A stretch of 64,000 nucleotides of DNA from assembly GCA_000388065.2 (NCBI GenBank), contig KB932201.1. One strand, 5' to 3'. Each line of letters opens with the position of its first letter. Within the stretch, counting starts at the first letter, position 1. This document shows, piece after piece, positions 17,430 to 23,517 of the stretch. The translations under genes were made by a program, and so were the position numbers. Origin of the DNA: Fonticula alba ATCC 38817. Taxonomy: Eukaryota > Protista > Nucleariida. The notes under the pieces are model-generated. The model was not told the origin of the DNA and did no database searches. It saw nothing but the letters and a program-made list of their open reading frames with translations.

Positions 17430-19527
17430 GGCAGGCTGCACGTAAACAAAGGCGCGGTGGCGGGGGGGGGGGGGGGGGGGCCGATGGCACAACAAACATA
17501 AAAAGCCCGACTGTCGGGCGGCGGAGTCTCGGGGGGGGCGGGGCCGGGGAAGGGCAAAGGGGAGGCGAGCGCGGGGGAGAGGCACGCAAAGGGGCGAGGC
17601 GATGGGGCTGCAAAAAAGAGCGCTGGCTGTGAGGTGGGGGGCGGGGAAGGAAAAAAGTGTGACGACAAGCGACAGTCAATGTCCAGGCCATTGCTGTCGC
17701 AGGTTCACCCTGCCCGGGGGTCCCCACCGCAAGATAAACCTGCATTCGGCTTCGGTGCCCAACTGACTCCTCTCGCCTGCCCAGTCCCCCTCCCCCCCCC
17801 NNNNNNNNNNCCCCCCCCCCCGGGCCGCGGGCAACCACAGGATGCATGTGCGAGCGCATAGGCGCGCAGTGGGTCGCCTCCTTTGCCGGGCCCCAGATGG
17901 GGGCGTCCAGATCCGATGGTCAGCAGGTGAACGGGGGCCGCAGCAACGACCGGTGCCAGGGGAAAGGCCGGCCGTCCCTCGGCCACCATGCAGCCCCGCG
18001 CCCGGGGAGACCCTGTCGCGCGGGATGGCCCGGAAATGCCTTTCCCCTTGGTCCTCCACATGCGACTGTAAGGAGGCCCGATGGCCGGGCCGCATGCGCA
18101 TGCCCGGCCGCGACACTCCACACAGTGTGCCGGAAGGGCCGCACATTGTGGCGAGCTCGCGCTGGCCGGACCTTTGCACTTCCGATCCAGCGAGCGCAAC
18201 AGCATCCCCCCCCCCCCCGGGAATGGGGTGGCCGACGGCCTCCTGGCCGACAGGCGCTCGATAGAGGCTGGTGAACAAGCGGTCGGCCCTCCCTGAGGCC
18301 GGCTCTCTTGCCCCTCGGCCACTGGCCGGCAGCCCACCTGGCGTGCCTTCGCCGGGACGCCCTTCCCGCGCCTCCCGCGCGTTCCATGCGAGGAGGGATC
18401 CCCCCTCGTCGCGACGGCGCCGAATATCTGGACCACCTCGCCGCGGGGCGGGACGGACCACAGTCCACGTTCGGGCGTGTCTGTGTGCAAATGTATCGGG
18501 GTGCGCCTGTGTGGGGATGGCTGGCTGGGCGCGCGGGCGTGCAACCACACCAGGCATTTCGCGCGTCTTTATTTCCTCCCCCCCATGCTTCTGTGGGGGC
18601 CAATAAAACAGCTGCCAAGAGAGGACAAGGTGCAAGGAGCCCTTCCCCGGGAAGCGGGGAGAAAATATTAATAATAATAAAGAACCCACGCGGGATATTA
18701 TCCACCACCAGCTACTTGGTGCCCGGCCCAGCGTGCATGCCTCCCGCCTGGGCATATGCCGGGCGGATCCACCACAATCCCGCGCGGGGCCCTCCGGTGC
18801 TGGCCCCGATCAGCCCCCTTCGAGCATGGACCGCCCCCCCACGGCAACAGCGAGGGGAACGGAGCGGACCTATTCAATTGTGGACTTAGAGCCGTCTGTT
18901 TATAGCCCTCACCGCGAGCGGGCAAATGTCGGACCATTCGGTAACAGTTCACTCGGGCCTCGTGTGCGCACGGCCGTACACAGTTAAGATCATATGCCCG
19001 CCGGCGGATCACTGGATCAAGGCCTCATTTTCAGCATCAAATGCCCACGCACAAGGTCCCCTCTCCCGGGAGCCCCTCTTGTCCGTAACTTCTCCGGGGA
19101 TGCGCCAGCGTTGGCACCCGGAAATGGAGATGGCCAGAGGGCGGCGGGGATGAGATGTTCCGCGCCGGCACGCGATGGTGGCCGCAACGCCCGGGGAGGG
19201 GGACGGGGCCCGGGGGCGGGAGCCGCGACTGTGGCAGGCTTTGACCTAGACATCATTCCTGGCGGCCGAGATCTCCCTCGCGCTCCTCGCGCCCGGTGTC
19301 AGCGACGGAGGCCGAAGTGAGGGACTCGTGGGGGCGCGGTCGCCGGGGCGGCCTCCGTGCCAGACAAAGCCCCGTCGTGCCTCCTTCTCCCTGCCCTTTC
19401 CCCTTGTCGGTTCTTCGCTCGAGACATCGTCCTCTTCCTGTCCCTCCTTCCCCGCTCTCGCCCGTCCCCCCCCCCCTCCCCCCCCCGGCCCCCGCTAGCC
19501 CGTGAGCGGGCAATTATCGACCACCCG

Positions 19528-20475
19528 ATGGACCCCCCGGCCGAATTCTCACCCCTCAGCAGTGGCCAACTCTTCCCCGAGGTGCCCGGTAGCCCGCCGG
19601 CTGGCTTGGTGTCGGCCGAGGCCAGTGTCTCGGATTTGGATGCCCTGCGTTTGTCCAATCTGTCGGAGGACTCGCTCCGGTATCCGCTGTCGGAAAACTG
19701 CGACATCATCAACCCCCCGCTGTCGGCATCGATCCTGGCCACCCCGGCCGAGGGGGATGCTGACAGCCCGAGTGACCCTTCCAGTGTCCTGCTGGCCGAT
19801 GACGAGGGCGTGTCGGGCACCGACTCCAGCCCGCAGCACCTCCTGCTGCCGGTGGACCCGGCTGTCGATGCCCTCTCCGACAGCGTGGCCCCGGTTTCCT
19901 CGGGCTCGGTGCTGCGTCTCCCGCCGGCGGGCGCACCCTCCTCGAATGTCGCCCAGGCTCCTGGCCCTGTGATGGCGGCGGCGGCGGCGGCAAGCACCGT
20001 GGCAACTCCCCCCGGCGCTTCGAGCCCTGGTCCTGACCCGCTGCAGCAGGGCGCCACCGGGGTCCGGTGGCCGGCCGCCACGGCCACCGCAGCCCCAGCG
20101 GCCCCGACACCGGCCCCGACGCCGGCCACCATGTCCAAAAGCACGGCAGCCTCGCCGCAGACCATTCGCGTGGACACGTCCCCCGGGGTCGGGGGTGTTT
20201 CCCTGGATGGCGGATCGCAATCCGGGCCGACGGGGATCCTGCGCACCGCCGGGGCGGGCGTGCCTCTGCACGGCTTCTCCGAGAGTCTGCTGGAGTCTCT
20301 ACGGTCGACCATGCATGTTTTCGCCGAGCTTGGCCATGGCGGCAGCCCGTTGGAGCTGGCGGCCGAGCGGCTGCTGATCAGCTCGCGCCTGATGGCCAGG
20401 CCGGACACCGCTGTGGAGGCCGGTCCGGTCGCCGTGCCGGCCTCCGGTCCGGGGACTTGCCGGCCGCGCCGATGA
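19528..20475 (+). CDS. 315-codon S/A/P-rich ORF directly upstream of the glutaminase-like CDS; probably its N-terminal extension, separated by a one-base frame break
   Basis: Starts ATG GAC CCC at 19528 and has coding-like composition. Its TGA (20473-20475) overlaps the ATG (20472-20474) of the glutaminase frame. No convincing intron bridges the two frames. Confidence 0.6.
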   Translation: MDPPAEFSPLSSGQLFPEVPGSPPAGLVSAEASVSDLDALRLSNLSEDSLRYPLSENCDIINPPLSASILATPAEGDADSPSDPSSVLLADDEGVSGTDSSPQHLLLPVDPAVDALSDSVAPVSSGSVLRLPPAGAPSSNVAQAPGPVMAAAAAASTVATPPGASSPGPDPLQQGATGVRWPAATATAAPAAPTPAPTPATMSKSTAASPQTIRVDTSPGVGGVSLDGGSQSGPTGILRTAGAGVPLHGFSESLLESLRSTMHVFAELGHGGSPLELAAERLLISSRLMARPDTAVEAGPVAVPASGPGTCRPRR

Positions 20476-20592
20476 GCCCCCTCTCGCCGCCGGCTTTCGC
20501 GGCCCTGCGAAACTCCCTCGCGGAGCTGGCCCGACAGGCGGACCCCGGGCCCGCGGATGCCGGGTCCTATGGCGAGGCGCCGATCGCCACCT

Positions 20593-20629
<37 letters not shown>

Positions 20630-23105
20630 ATCCTTCCCCTCCTTCCGGTCGTCAATGTCCTCGCCGCCAATCCTCCAGTCGGATCTGGGTGGCTTCCTGT
20701 CCGGCGGGCGCCCCGGGGGTGTTGGTGGCTTCGGCGCCGGCGCTGAGGACTGCGCCTCTGTGGCTGGCAGTGTTGCCTCCTCCTCGTCGACCACGGCCGA
20801 AGACACGTACATTCAGAATCTCTTCGCCACCCTGGACCCGGAGGGCACCGGGGCCATTTCCCGGCGGACGCTGGAGAGCATCACCCGCGAGGCCGGGCTC
20901 GACCCCGTGCGGTTGACCCCCCTTCGGGAGCAGCTGGATCAGCTCTGTGACCCGGGCGGTGATAGCGTGCGTCGTGGCTCTGCCCCCCCCCCCCCCCCGC
21001 GATCCTGGCTCCCGGCCTGGCTCCCCCTCTCTCTCTCGTCATCCCCTCTCGGTCTCCTTTTTCTCGCTCCCTCCCTCTCGGCCTCTATCCCTCTCGCCCC
21101 CCCCCCCCCCCTGCCCCCCTTCCACTTGTTCGCCTGCCCCTTGGCTCGACTGACATCGCCTCCACCCCTGCTTGCTCTTCTCCTCCCCACCCCTGTGACT
21201 GGGCGGTACCTCATGCAGGTGGACTATGACACCTTCTATGACCTGATGACGGCACCGGAGCACGCCGGGTCCATCCTGCGCAAGACCATCGGCGGGCAGC
21301 TGGTGATTCCCTCCTTCACGGAGTTCTGCCAGGAGCTGGTGGACATCTTCGAGTCGGTGCGCATGATGAACACCGGCCAGCGGGCCAGCTACATTCCGGA
21401 GCTCAGCCGGGTCCCGTCGCAGCGCTTCGGCATCGCCGTTTGCACGGTCGACGGCCAGGTCTTCGAGTATGGCGATGCCTCGGACACCCGCGGGACCACA
21501 TGCATGCAGGCCACCTGCACGCCGTTTTCCTATGCACTGGCCTTCGAGGAGGCCGGCCAGGAGAAGATCCTCAATCATGTCGGCCGCGAGCCAAGCGGCG
21601 CCGCCTTCAATGCCTTCATCCTAAATGCCGACGGCCTGCCGCACAATCCGATGATCAATGCCGGGGCCATTGTCACGGCCACCCTCATCAAGCCCGGCGA
21701 GTTGACCTCCACCCGCATGCAGCATGTGATGGACCGCTTCCAGTGCGTGCCCCGTCGTCTCGTGGCTTTTGCCGGCCGAGCCCAGCCAGGCCCTCCCTGC
21801 TGACCCCCTCCCCTCTTCTCCCCTCGGCCCGGTGGTCGTCATCGCCCATGCTCCCCCCCTCCCCCCCCTCCCCGCGCGCCTGTCCCGCGTCCTGCTCGTT
21901 TGCCTGCCTGGGCTGCCTCAATTTGCTGACTGATCCGCTTTCCTTGCCTTTGCGGCACCGGGCCGGTGCCAGGAAAATGGCCGGCGGCATGCCGCTGAGT
22001 TTCTCCCAACCCGTGTACCTCTCGGAGTTGGAGACCGCACACCGCAACTTCGCCCTCGGGTATTTCATGAAAAGCCAGGGCGCCTACCCGAGCGACATGA
22101 ATGTCGAGGAGGCATTGGACTTCTACTTCCAGCTTTGCTCGCTCGAGGTGACCTGCGAGCAGCTGGCCATCATGACGGCCACCCTGGCCAACCGGGGCGT
22201 GTGCCCGCTTTCGGAGGAGTACGTGTGCCCGTGCTTTCCGGCCGCGCCCTTTTCCTCCATCGCCCCCCCCCCCCCTGCCCCCTTTTGTGGGCCACCTTTG
22301 TGCGCCGGATCTAACGTGCACCGTCGGGCTGGGGCATTGTCCTCCCCTTGGGCCTTCCTCAAACAGGGTCTGCTTCTCGCTGGAGGCGGCCAAATCCACC
22401 ATCCAGCTGATGTACTCGTGTGGCATGAATGAGTCTTCCGGCGAGTGGGCCTGCACCATCGGCCTGCCGGCCAAGTCCGGCGTCTCCGGCTGCATCATCC
22501 TGTGCATCCCCAATGTCCTGGGCTTGGCCATCTGGTCGCCGAACATCGACGAGTGCGGCAACTCCGTACGCGGGACCAAGTTCTCGCGCGAGCTGTGTGA
22601 CCGCTTCTCCCTGAACATCTTCGACCAGCTGATCGGCACCACGTCGCACATTGACCCCACCCTGCCGATCAACTACGCCGAGGGGGGCCCCAGCGCGCCG
22701 AATGCCTCTCTCGGGCGTTCCGGACGGCATGGGCTCCATGGGGCCGGTGTTGGTGGCATCCAGGGCGGAAGTTTCATCGGACCCAGCTTCGGCGGCGGCG
22801 GCGGCAGCGGCGGCGGTGGGTCGGCGGCTCTCCTGTCGCCGGGGCGCGAGTCGGGCCCGGACATGGGCACCGCCCCGGCGATGTCGGCCGGGCGGGTGTC
22901 CACCGGGCCCGGCCTAAGTGGCGTGACCAGCACCGCCCACGACCCGTCCCTCTTCACGCCCACCCGAATGTCCGAGGCGCCACTGTCGCTGAAGAAGCTT
23001 CACAGCCGCGAGGCCGCCGGCCCACGCGTGGCCCAGCTCATCAACAAGCAGCAGCACCAGGAGCTGCAGCACAAGCGCCACCAGCTGGTCTATCGGAACC
23101 AATGA
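20472..23105 (+). CDS. GLS: Glutaminase-like protein of the animal GLS type with an EF-hand-like N-terminal domain; predicted catalytically inactive; exons 20472-20966, 21219-21742, 21973-22218, 22367-23105
   Basis: QLVIPSFTEF..GQRASYIPELSRV..FGIAVCTVDGQ..VGREPSG..PHNPMINAGAI..KMAGG..SELETAHRNFALGYFMK..ALDFYFQLCSLE..ATLANRGVCPLS..LMYSCGM..IGLPAKSGVSG..GLAIWSPNIDECGNSVRG. All three introns are GT-AG with compatible phases. The SxxK motif reads ATCT and SCGMY reads SCGMN. No C-terminal ankyrin repeats. Confidence 0.92.
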
Positions 23106-23517
23106 TGCTGCTGGGCACTGGTGCACCTGGGTGTGTCTGCGTGCATGTGCGCGCGCGTGTGTGTGTGTCTGCTTGCTTGCTTGCTTGCGGGCGCATGCGT
23201 GCCTTTGTCCCCCTCCCCCAGCTTGTGCCCGTATCATTTGCCCCTTACTGCTGCGGGGGCGGGGGGAGAGGGAAATACACTTGCGATAGATGCGTGTTGC
23301 CAGTCGAGGTTGCGTATGCGTGCGCCCGGGCGGTGACTTGCTTGTTTTGTATATTTTCGAAGCCCGGCGCCGCACTCGAGAGGGAGGCAGGGGAGTGCTT
23401 GGCCTTCGAACACACGCCGTGACTCGGCATGTGGGAATGTGTGGGCCGGCGGGCGGGCGGGCGGGCGGGCGGGCGGGCGCTTGTGTGCGGGGTTGAGCAC
23501 AGACGCCGGCGGCCCTG

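What the first reader, a model, noticed from the sequence alone, without database searches (positions are those of the whole stretch)
21219..22640. Intact glutaminase homolog that has lost all three catalytic residues but kept the substrate-binding pocket: candidate glutamine-sensing pseudo-enzyme
Seen in sequence: the motif that is CLQSCVKP in human GLS reads CMQATCTP here (GCC Ala at 21510-21512, ACG Thr at 21519-21521), and SCGMYDFSG reads SCGMNESSG (AAT Asn at 22428-22430). Established knowledge: serine-dependent glutaminases of the beta-lactamase fold need the SxxK Ser nucleophile and Lys (human S286/K289) plus Tyr466. The other ligand-contacting residues are retained: Y249 (ASYIPEL), Q285, N335 (PHNPMINAG), E381/N388 (SELETAHRN), Y414 (LDFYFQLCS), V484 (AKSGVSG). 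The domain has no stops or frameshifts and its three introns have clean splice sites. Three separate changes falling exactly on the catalytic positions argue against sequencing error or neutral decay. Inference: a non-catalytic protein under selection that binds glutamine or glutamate as a sensor, or acts as a scaffold or regulatory subunit of an active paralog. I know of no described case, but could not search.
Basis: partly seen in the sequence, partly recalled or inferred. Interest (0 to 1): 0.9.

Follow-up and report, generated by a model that had tools for sequence, protein, structure and literature searches.

The report
Dead glutaminase paralog kept by selection
The amoeba-like protist Fonticula alba expresses a well-preserved copy of the enzyme glutaminase that has lost exactly its three catalytic residues, so it most likely works as a non-catalytic glutamine/glutamate-binding partner of its active sister enzyme; similar "dead" glutaminase domains turn out to be common but undescribed.

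Summary
The window is Fonticula alba, and the gene is H696_00684, annotated only as hypothetical protein/glutaminase.

- **Residues:** alignment to human GLS shows Ser286→Ala, Lys289→Thr and Tyr466→Asn at the stated codons. Y249, Q285, N335, E381, N388, Y414 and V484 are kept.
- **Expression:** an RNA contig spans all four exons with GT..AG joints at the predicted sites and no mismatch. Three DNA samples other than the assembly's source carry the same codons.
- **Selection:** the gene is the sister paralog (UFBoot 98) of H696_00453, which keeps Ser/Lys/Tyr. Branch lengths are equal (0.52 vs 0.50). Relative-rate tests are not significant.
- **Conserved sites:** it keeps 38/38 other ≥95%-conserved columns and 6/6 pocket residues, but 0/3 catalytic residues.
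- **Fold:** the AlphaFold model (pLDDT 88) matches glutaminase C (TM 0.89).

Pseudo-enzyme status under purifying selection is therefore well supported. Ligand binding and the sensor or regulatory role remain inference.

A wider pattern emerged. Dead, pocket-retaining glutaminase domains recur independently in other protists, a nematode and bacteria. Of 73 two-domain glutaminases sampled, 66 pair one live with one dead domain, which favours a partner-of-the-live-enzyme ("prozyme"-like) role.

I found no paper describing this. This scan has not reported this gene elsewhere.

The parts
19528..20654 (+). Probable N-terminal extension of the protein (about 376 aa, rich in Ala/Ser/Gly/Pro, no Pfam domain). 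It is in frame only after adding the G that the assembly lacks behind 20450. The start codon is not established.
   Evidence: RNA contigs cover 19632-20582 colinearly. RNA X8 and DNA X5 and X7 all carry an extra G behind 20450. The corrected frame is open from ATG 19528. Pfam finds nothing.
20655..20966 (+). Exon holding the annotated start (MSSPPILQ...) and the beginning of the EF-hand-like N-terminal domain.
   Evidence: P0001 equals my spliced model. The RNA contig covers 20638-20966. Weak EF-hand_7 match, E = 0.013. The model aligns to GAC over about 410 columns.
20967..21218 (+). Intron, 252 nt, GTGCGT...CAG.
   Evidence: RNA joint 20966|21219, GT..AG.
21219..21742 (+). Exon with the end of the N-terminal domain and the first third of the glutaminase domain. 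It includes Y249, Q285, the degenerate SxxK (A-T-C-T) and N335.
   Evidence: Pfam profile 1-118; alignment to human GLS; RNA contig with 0 mismatches.
21510..21512 (+). GCC Ala at the place of the nucleophile Ser286 (the paralog has TCC Ser).
   Evidence: Identical in RNA X8 and DNA X5, X7 and X14.
21519..21521 (+). ACG Thr at the place of the general base Lys289 (the paralog has AAG Lys).
21743..21972 (+). Intron, 230 nt, GTGCGT...CAG.
   Evidence: RNA joint 21742|21973.
21973..22218 (+). Exon with E381, N388 and Y414 retained, and D386→His.
   Evidence: Pfam profile 123-199; ungapped alignment to GLS 364-443.
22219..22366 (+). Intron, 148 nt, GTACGT...CAG.
   Evidence: RNA joint 22218|22367.
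22367..23105 (+). Last exon: the end of the glutaminase domain (Y466→Asn, V484 kept), then a Gly/Ser-rich tail of about 150 aa in place of ankyrin repeats. Stop codon at 23103-23105.
   Evidence: Pfam profile 204-286; alignment to GLS; no ankyrin match; the RNA contig reaches 23131.
22428..22430 (+). AAT Asn at the place of Tyr466 (the paralog has TAC Tyr).
   Evidence: Identical in RNA X8 and DNA X5, X7 and X14.

Best explanation
H696_00684 is a pseudo-enzyme: a catalytically dead but selectively maintained paralog of kidney-type ("glutaminase A") glutaminase. It arose by gene duplication in the Fonticula lineage.

**Shown**
- It is transcribed and spliced.
- It folds, by prediction, like glutaminase C with its N-terminal helical domain.
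- It has lost Ser286, Lys289 and Tyr466.
- It has kept every other highly conserved position, including the six side chains that hold glutamine or glutamate.
- It has evolved at the same rate and with the same site pattern as its live sister H696_00453.

**Inferred**
- It cannot hydrolyse glutamine by the serine mechanism.
- It still binds glutamine or glutamate.
- It acts together with the live paralog as a non-catalytic subunit of a mixed dimer or tetramer, tuning that enzyme's activity or its response to ligand. This is the way trypanosomatid "prozymes" work.

The last step rests on a Rosetta-stone argument. In bacteria and in other protists, two glutaminase domains fused in one chain are almost always one live plus one dead, pocket-retaining domain.
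For: **The residues**
- Identity and numbering of the residues.
- The mutants S286A, K289A and Y466A show a significant reduction in KGA activity: PMC4929687.

**The gene is real and expressed**
- One 1901-nt RNA contig has the three GT..AG joints and 0 mismatches.
- DNA contigs from an organism-B sample, a soil metagenome and a sediment metagenome are identical at the three codons.
- The only coding variant, 21278 G>A, is synonymous.

**It is a sister of a live paralog**
- FastTree support 0.96.
- IQ-TREE UFBoot 98, terminal branches 0.52 vs 0.50.
- Tajima relative-rate tests against 7 outgroups are all non-significant.

**It is under constraint**
- Substitution frequency by conservation class is 0.11/0.24/0.38/0.48 for the dead copy and 0.03/0.24/0.43/0.54 for the live one.
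- It keeps 38/38 other ≥95% columns and 6/6 pocket residues, but 0/3 catalytic residues.
- If the gene had drifted neutrally after a first inactivating hit, losing both remaining catalytic residues and none of 44 other conserved sites has probability ≤2.7e-4.
- GC3 is 0.86 against an intron GC of 0.70.

**Fold**
- AlphaFold2 pLDDT 88, pTM 0.90.
- Foldseek top hits are GAC, TM 0.89.

**Pairing precedent**
- Of 73 sampled proteins with two full glutaminase domains, 60 are live+dead and 6 dead+live.
- One is Acanthopleuribacter pedis "glutaminase A", whose second domain also reads A..T at SxxK.
- 74 of 97 dead domains keep ≥5/6 pocket residues.
- GAC Y466W has been solved with L-Gln bound (7sbn, listed). 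This shows that a pocket altered at a catalytic position can still hold glutamine.
Against: - No binding, activity or interaction data exist.
- Pocket retention in this one protein is not statistically separable from its overall conservation.
- The live paralog's model is incomplete. Its exon with E381/N388 falls in a run of N in the assembly, so its activity and its tetramer-interface residues are not fully visible.
- The tandem live+dead proteins arose independently, so they are an analogy and not orthologs.
- The dead copy has long disordered N- and C-terminal extensions that the live copy lacks. These could point to a different, partner-independent role.
- D386, which is 96% conserved among the closest relatives, is His here.
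- No ortholog closer than about 50% identity was found, so dN/dS on this branch cannot be computed and the date of inactivation is unknown.
Confidence: 0.55

Rival explanations
1. It is a stand-alone glutamine/glutamate sensor or adaptor. The dead domain binds the amino acid and signals through its long disordered N- and C-terminal extensions to other proteins, without involving the live glutaminase.
For: - The pocket is fully kept.
- The dead copy has an N-terminal extension of about 376 aa and a tail of about 150 aa that the live paralog lacks.
- Stand-alone dead glutaminases exist in Sphaerothecum, Percolomonas, Echinamoeba and Romanomermis.
Against: - No signalling domain is detectable.
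- The extensions are low-complexity sequence.
- The strong live+dead pairing in fused proteins points to work with a live domain.
- Glutaminases are obligate oligomers, and their activity depends on assembly (PMC10912226).
Confidence: 0.2
2. It is a recently inactivated gene on its way to decay. Transcription and the open frame are leftovers, and the good conservation reflects selection before inactivation.
For: - No close ortholog is available to show constraint after inactivation.
- In a 64% GC genome, open frames persist by chance. For example, the 252-nt intron 20967-21218 is in frame and has no stop.
- Population variation is too low to test: one synonymous site.
Against: - All three catalytic residues are changed, yet 0 of 44 other ≥95%-conserved sites are. 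The probability is ≤2.7e-4 under neutrality after the first hit.
- The branch length equals that of the live sister.
- Splicing is precise at three introns and GC3 is 0.86.
- The same pattern recurs in many independent lineages.
Confidence: 0.08
3. It is still an enzyme, with another mechanism or substrate. For example, it could use Thr205, Thr203 or Cys204 near the old nucleophile, or act on a glutamine-like compound.
For: - The pocket and oxyanion-hole backbone positions are kept.
- A new hydroxyl (Thr) sits where Lys289 was.
- The changes A/T/N or A/N/H recur in unrelated lineages. This could mean a defined alternative function and not simple loss.
Against: - Thr203 and Cys204 are also present in the live paralog, and Cys is common in the family, so they are not new.
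- No general base replaces Lys289 or Tyr466.
- Single alanine mutants of each residue already show a significant reduction in KGA activity (PMC4929687).
Confidence: 0.07
4. It is an assembly or sequencing artefact at the three codons.
For: The same assembly does contain a 1-bp error 1 kb upstream, at 20450.
Against: The RNA contig and three DNA data sets other than the source's are identical at all three codons.
Confidence: 0.01

Closest known systems
Kidney-type glutaminase GLS/GAC and bacterial "glutaminase A" (Pfam PF04960, serine-dependent beta-lactamase-like fold)
   Same: - Full-length domain match.
- 38-39% identity to human GAC.
- The predicted fold matches with TM 0.89, including the N-terminal helical (EF-hand-like) domain.
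- All substrate-contacting side chains are kept.
   Different: - Ser286, Lys289 and Tyr466 are Ala, Thr and Asn.
- There are no C-terminal ankyrin repeats.
- It has long low-complexity N- and C-terminal extensions.
Fonticula alba H696_00453 (P0012), the sister paralog
   Same: - Same genome and same contig.
- 53% identical over the domain.
- Sister in the tree (UFBoot 98), with equal branch length.
- It also lacks ankyrin repeats.
   Different: - It keeps Ser (TCC), Lys (AAG) and Tyr (TAC).
- Its termini are shorter.
- Its annotated model lacks about 35 residues that fall in an assembly gap.
Trypanosomatid prozymes (AdoMetDC prozyme, PMC5201418; DHS paralog, PMC3663545)
   Same: A catalytically dead paralog made by lineage-specific duplication of a metabolic enzyme that works as an oligomer. 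It is kept by selection beside the live copy.
   Different: - The fold and pathway are different.
- For prozymes, hetero-oligomerisation and strong activation are demonstrated. Here they are only inferred.
Two-domain "glutaminase A" proteins, e.g. Acanthopleuribacter pedis P0292, Engelhardtia mirabilis P0300, Rhodelphis marinus P0123, Andalucia godoyi P0126
   Same: - They contain a glutaminase domain with dead catalytic residues (A..T/H, A..N/H, S..N/N, H..N/Y) but an intact pocket.
- P0292 domain 2 even shares the Ala and Thr replacements.
   Different: - The dead domain is fused in cis to a live one, whereas in Fonticula the two are separate genes.
- The origins are independent.
- None is described in the literature I could search.
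Dead class-I glutamine-amidotransferase domains (CPS1 N-terminal domain; viral pseudo-GATs, PMC7605207)
   Same: A "glutaminase" module that lost its nucleophile and serves a non-catalytic role.
   Different: The fold is unrelated (Cys-His-Glu triad GATase). There is no homology to PF04960.

Membership tests
Glutaminase family PF04960 (homology) | Significant full-length match to the family profile | tested here: met
   E = 7.9e-101, profile 1-286 of 286. The three exons give profile positions 1-118, 123-199 and 204-286.
Glutaminase family PF04960 (homology) | Beta-lactamase-like glutaminase fold | tested here: met
   AlphaFold2 pLDDT 88, pTM 0.90. Foldseek finds GAC chains at E = 1.8e-33, TM 0.81/0.89. 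This is a predicted structure, not a solved one.
Glutaminase enzyme (EC 3.5.1.2, serine mechanism) | SxxK dyad: nucleophile Ser286 and general base Lys289 | tested here: not met
   Ala202 and Thr205. Both columns are 100% conserved in 243 active domains.
Glutaminase enzyme (EC 3.5.1.2, serine mechanism) | Tyr466 assisting proton transfer | tested here: not met
   Asn382. The column is 100% Tyr in active domains.
Glutaminase enzyme (EC 3.5.1.2, serine mechanism) | Substrate-binding residues Y249, Q285, N335, E381, N388, Y414, V484 | tested here: met
   All are identical.
Glutaminase enzyme (EC 3.5.1.2, serine mechanism) | Hydrolysis of glutamine to glutamate | not testable with these tools
   This needs an enzyme assay. 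Loss is expected, because the alanine mutants of KGA show a significant reduction in activity (PMC4929687).
Kidney-type / glutaminase A architecture | N-terminal EF-hand-like helical domain | tested here: met
   The model aligns to near-full-length GAC over about 410 columns, and helices at model residues 9-112 have pLDDT >88. The Pfam match is only weak: EF-hand_7, E = 0.013.
Kidney-type / glutaminase A architecture | C-terminal ankyrin repeats | tested here: not met
   No ankyrin family was found at E ≤ 1. The tail is Gly/Ser-rich. The live paralog lacks them too.
Pseudo-enzyme / prozyme-type regulatory paralog | Derived by duplication from an active enzyme, with the live copy retained | tested here: met
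   Sister to H696_00453 with UFBoot 98. The live copy has S/K/Y.
Pseudo-enzyme / prozyme-type regulatory paralog | Expressed and under purifying selection despite loss of catalytic residues | tested here: met
   - Spliced RNA contig.
- Equal rates.
- Site-class gradient.
- 44/44 other conserved sites kept.
- Neutral bound of 2.7e-4.
- dN/dS itself is not computable.
Pseudo-enzyme / prozyme-type regulatory paralog | Physical complex with the live paralog that changes its activity | not testable with these tools
   There is only indirect support from 66/73 fused live+dead two-domain proteins.

The most novel reading that the evidence does not exclude
Dead, pocket-retaining glutaminase domains form a widespread and so far undescribed class of glutamine/glutamate-binding regulatory modules. 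They work in pairs with a live glutaminase domain, fused in cis in many bacteria and protists and as a separate gene in Fonticula. They would make glutaminase activity allosterically responsive to its own substrate or product. H696_00684 would be the cleanest stand-alone "glutaminase prozyme".
Probability: 0.35. Interest if true: 0.75.

Novelty: new variant of a known kind. Interest (0 to 1): 0.58.

Why it matters
Glutaminase is a central enzyme of nitrogen and carbon metabolism and a drug target. Its regulation by oligomerisation is under active study.

A naturally occurring dead subunit that keeps the ligand pocket would be a new regulatory principle for this family. It would add a glutaminase entry to the list of prozyme-type pseudo-enzymes.

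The repeated live+dead pairing found here gives tractable bacterial models for testing that principle, for example the two-domain "glutaminase A" proteins.

There is also a practical point. These proteins are annotated simply as "glutaminase" or "glutaminase A", so metabolic reconstructions overcount active enzymes.

Tried and rejected
1. **dN/dS.** No ortholog closer than about 50% identity turned up in 5.8 billion clustered proteins or 1.84 billion representatives. At about 1 substitution per site between the paralogs, synonymous sites are saturated. Environmental and strain contigs differ by one synonymous site only. I replaced dN/dS with relative-rate and site-class tests.

2. **Completing the live paralog.** Its missing 35 residues lie in a run of N, and no alternative full-length protein exists in the collection.

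3. **First tree without the paralog.** It put the gene, with weak support (0.44), beside second domains of long proteins. This resolved once P0012 was added, so I rejected it as a long-branch artefact.

4. **Close-relatives-only conservation scan.** It suggested extra losses at \"invariant\" sites, such as His→Leu at P0001 residue 222. In the broader set of 243 active domains that column is under 90% conserved.

5. **Phosphate-site and activation-loop residues of human GAC (K320, Y394, K398).** They differ here, but they also differ in the family consensus or in the live paralog. They are therefore not informative.

6. **Pfam on the N-terminal extension.** It found nothing.

7. **Literature.** Searches for a PF04960 pseudo-enzyme, tandem glutaminases or Fonticula glutaminase returned only class-I amidotransferase, PDX and CPS1 cases.

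8. **Not attempted.** I did not build a multimer model of dead plus live paralog, because the tool takes single stored proteins only and the partner is incomplete.
Full report
**What is there**

The window is GC-rich (64%) eukaryotic DNA. Exon 1 of the gene translates to a protein 100% identical to Fonticula alba H696_00684 (P0001, 606 aa), which sources call "hypothetical protein" or "glutaminase".

My splice model is 20655-20966, 21219-21742, 21973-22218 and 22367-23105. It reproduces that protein exactly. Pfam PF04960 (Glutaminase) is matched over its entire profile.

**Check of the observation**

The three codons read GCC, ACG and AAT at the stated coordinates. HMMER alignments to solved GLS/GAC chains place them on Ser286, Lys289 and Tyr466. 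The same alignments place the retained residues on Y249, Q285, N335, E381, N388, Y414 and V484.

Thangavelu et al. describe Ser286-Lys289 as the catalytic dyad, with Tyr466 assisting proton transfer. They report a significant reduction in activity for the S286A, K289A and Y466A mutants, and they list the same contact residues (PMC4929687).

**Is the sequence real and used?**

Logan contigs of an RNA run of the same organism contain one 1901-nt contig. It covers 20638-20966, 21219-21742, 21973-22218 and 22367-23131, with GT..AG joints exactly at the predicted sites and no mismatch.

DNA contigs from a differently labelled organism's sample, a soil metagenome and a sediment metagenome are identical at the three codons. 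The single coding difference (21278 G>A) is synonymous.

The RNA and two of these DNA sets carry an extra G behind 20450. The assembly therefore has a 1-bp deletion there. With it corrected, the reading frame is open back to an ATG at 19528, and RNA covers 19632-20582 without joints. The true protein probably has up to about 376 more low-complexity N-terminal residues than annotated. The start codon itself is not established.

**Origin and selection**

The genome encodes a second family member, H696_00453 (P0012), with Ser, Lys and Tyr intact. About 35 residues of its annotated model are missing because the exon lies in a run of N in the assembly.

The two are sister paralogs:
- FastTree support is 0.96 on 306 domains.
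- IQ-TREE LG+G4 gives UFBoot 98 on 66 domains, with terminal branches of 0.52 (dead) and 0.50 (live).
- Tajima relative-rate tests against seven outgroups are all non-significant: 29-35 versus 23-33 unique changes.

Where the sister still has the family consensus residue, the dead copy differs at 11%, 24%, 38% and 48% of columns in falling conservation classes. The live copy differs at 3%, 24%, 43% and 54%.

Against 243 active domains, the dead copy keeps 38 of 38 other ≥95%-conserved columns and 6 of 6 pocket residues. It keeps none of the three catalytic residues, each 100% conserved.
- The chance that three changes among these 47 columns hit exactly the catalytic three is 6e-5.
- If the gene had drifted neutrally after a first inactivating hit, losing both other catalytic residues and none of 44 other conserved sites has probability at most 2.7e-4.

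GC3 is 0.86, against an intron GC of 0.70. I take this as good evidence for purifying selection on fold and pocket, with constraint released only at the catalytic residues.

A formal dN/dS is not possible. Nothing closer than about 50% identity exists in the collections searched.

**Structure**

AlphaFold2 with a 66-sequence alignment gives mean pLDDT 88 and pTM 0.90 for residues 40-480. Foldseek finds glutaminase C chains first (E = 1.8e-33, TM 0.81/0.89, about 410 aligned columns), so the N-terminal helical domain is included.

There are no ankyrin repeats. Coordinates are not returned by the tool, so I could not inspect pocket geometry.

I extracted ten functional columns from every glutaminase domain in the proteins fetched. 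Of 440 full-length domains, 97 lack the Ser/Lys/Tyr set, and 74 of those keep at least 5 of 6 pocket residues.

Stand-alone dead copies occur in Sphaerothecum destruens, Percolomonas, Echinamoeba exundans and the nematode Romanomermis.

Among 73 proteins with two full domains, 60 are live+dead, 6 dead+live, 5 live+live and 2 dead+dead. Named examples are:
- Acanthopleuribacter pedis "glutaminase A", whose second domain has Ala and Thr at SxxK and His for Tyr466
- Engelhardtia mirabilis
- Rhodelphis marinus
- Andalucia godoyi

In the tree the dead domains are scattered, so they arose many times. The sample is not random, because it consists of the best hits to the two Fonticula proteins. The frequencies are therefore not population estimates, but the live+dead pairing does not depend on that bias.

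**How it most likely works**

- **Shown:** it is a dead, expressed and constrained paralog beside a live one.
- **Inferred from established enzymology:** it cannot hydrolyse glutamine by the serine mechanism.
- **Inferred from the intact pocket:** it binds glutamine or glutamate. The pocket is kept in many independent dead domains, some retaining all six pocket residues while only 71-76% of other conserved columns survive.
- **Inferred by analogy:** it co-assembles with H696_00453 as a regulatory subunit. The analogies are the fused live+dead proteins, the dependence of glutaminase catalysis on tetramer and filament assembly (PMC10912226), and trypanosomatid prozymes (PMC5201418, PMC3663545).

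Rivals:
- a partner-independent sensor acting through its disordered extensions
- a changed catalytic chemistry
- a young pseudogene
- an artefact, which one search excludes

**Comparison with what is known**

By descent the protein belongs to PF04960 and to the kidney-type/glutaminase A branch. It fails the defining catalytic features of the enzyme, so it should not be filed as a glutaminase.

I found no paper on a PF04960 pseudo-enzyme, on tandem glutaminases or on Fonticula glutaminase. The "inactive glutaminase" literature concerns the unrelated class-I amidotransferase fold (CPS1, viral pseudo-GATs).

**Caveats**

- There are no biochemical data.
- The live partner is incompletely assembled.
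- The date of inactivation is unknown.
- Pocket retention in this single protein is not in itself significant.
- D386→His may alter tetramerisation, if my unchecked recollection is right that Asp386 sits at the dimer-dimer interface of GAC.
- First-stage notes of this scan report dead class-I glutaminase domains in other F. alba genes. I did not test these. If true, they would suggest a genome-wide shift in glutamine use.

Noticed in passing
window 20450: RNA (X8) and two DNA data sets from other samples (X5, X7) have an extra G behind 20450, so the assembly has a 1-bp deletion. Once corrected, the ORF 19357-20475 joins the glutaminase frame. The protein may then start at ATG 19528, about 376 aa upstream of the annotated start.
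   Followed up: partly
L001:4620-4900 (F. alba KB932201.1, gene H696_00453): A run of N lies inside the live paralog's gene. It hides the exon that should encode the E381/N388 segment, so the annotated 512-aa model skips about 35 residues.
   Followed up: partly
P0005, P0010, P0013, P0029, P0043, P0152-P0159, P0280-P0305 and others: Bacterial proteins of about 610-680 aa, annotated "glutaminase A", consist of two glutaminase domains. The first is live. The second has dead catalytic residues (A..N/H, S..N/N, A..T/H) but an intact pocket. In my sample 66 of 73 two-domain proteins are such live/dead pairs.
   Followed up: partly
P0123 (Rhodelphis marinus), P0126 (Andalucia godoyi), P0124, P0131-P0135 and similar proteins of 900-1300 aa: These long eukaryotic proteins carry one live glutaminase domain plus a second glutaminase-like domain. 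The second domain ranges from pocket-retaining to heavily degenerate (0-2 of 6 pocket residues).
   Followed up: no
window 19300-23500, runs X5, X6, X12, X13, X7, X14: Near-identical F. alba sequence (0-1 differences per contig) appears in DNA runs labelled as another organism, in a soil metagenome and in a sediment metagenome. The species, or a very close strain, is therefore present in unrelated samples.
   Followed up: no
window 19973, 22263, 23260: There are small length polymorphisms between samples: a GGC insertion in an alanine-rich coding repeat at 19973, a 3-nt deletion in the intron at 22263, and a GGG insertion in the 3' UTR at 23260.
   Followed up: no
other pieces of the same genome (earlier notes s1-065445, s1-065528, s1-065652, s1-065789): First-stage notes claim catalytically dead class-I glutaminase domains in CAD, GMP synthase and PabA-PabB of F. 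alba. If real, glutamine hydrolysis may be reduced genome-wide. These notes are unverified.
   Followed up: no
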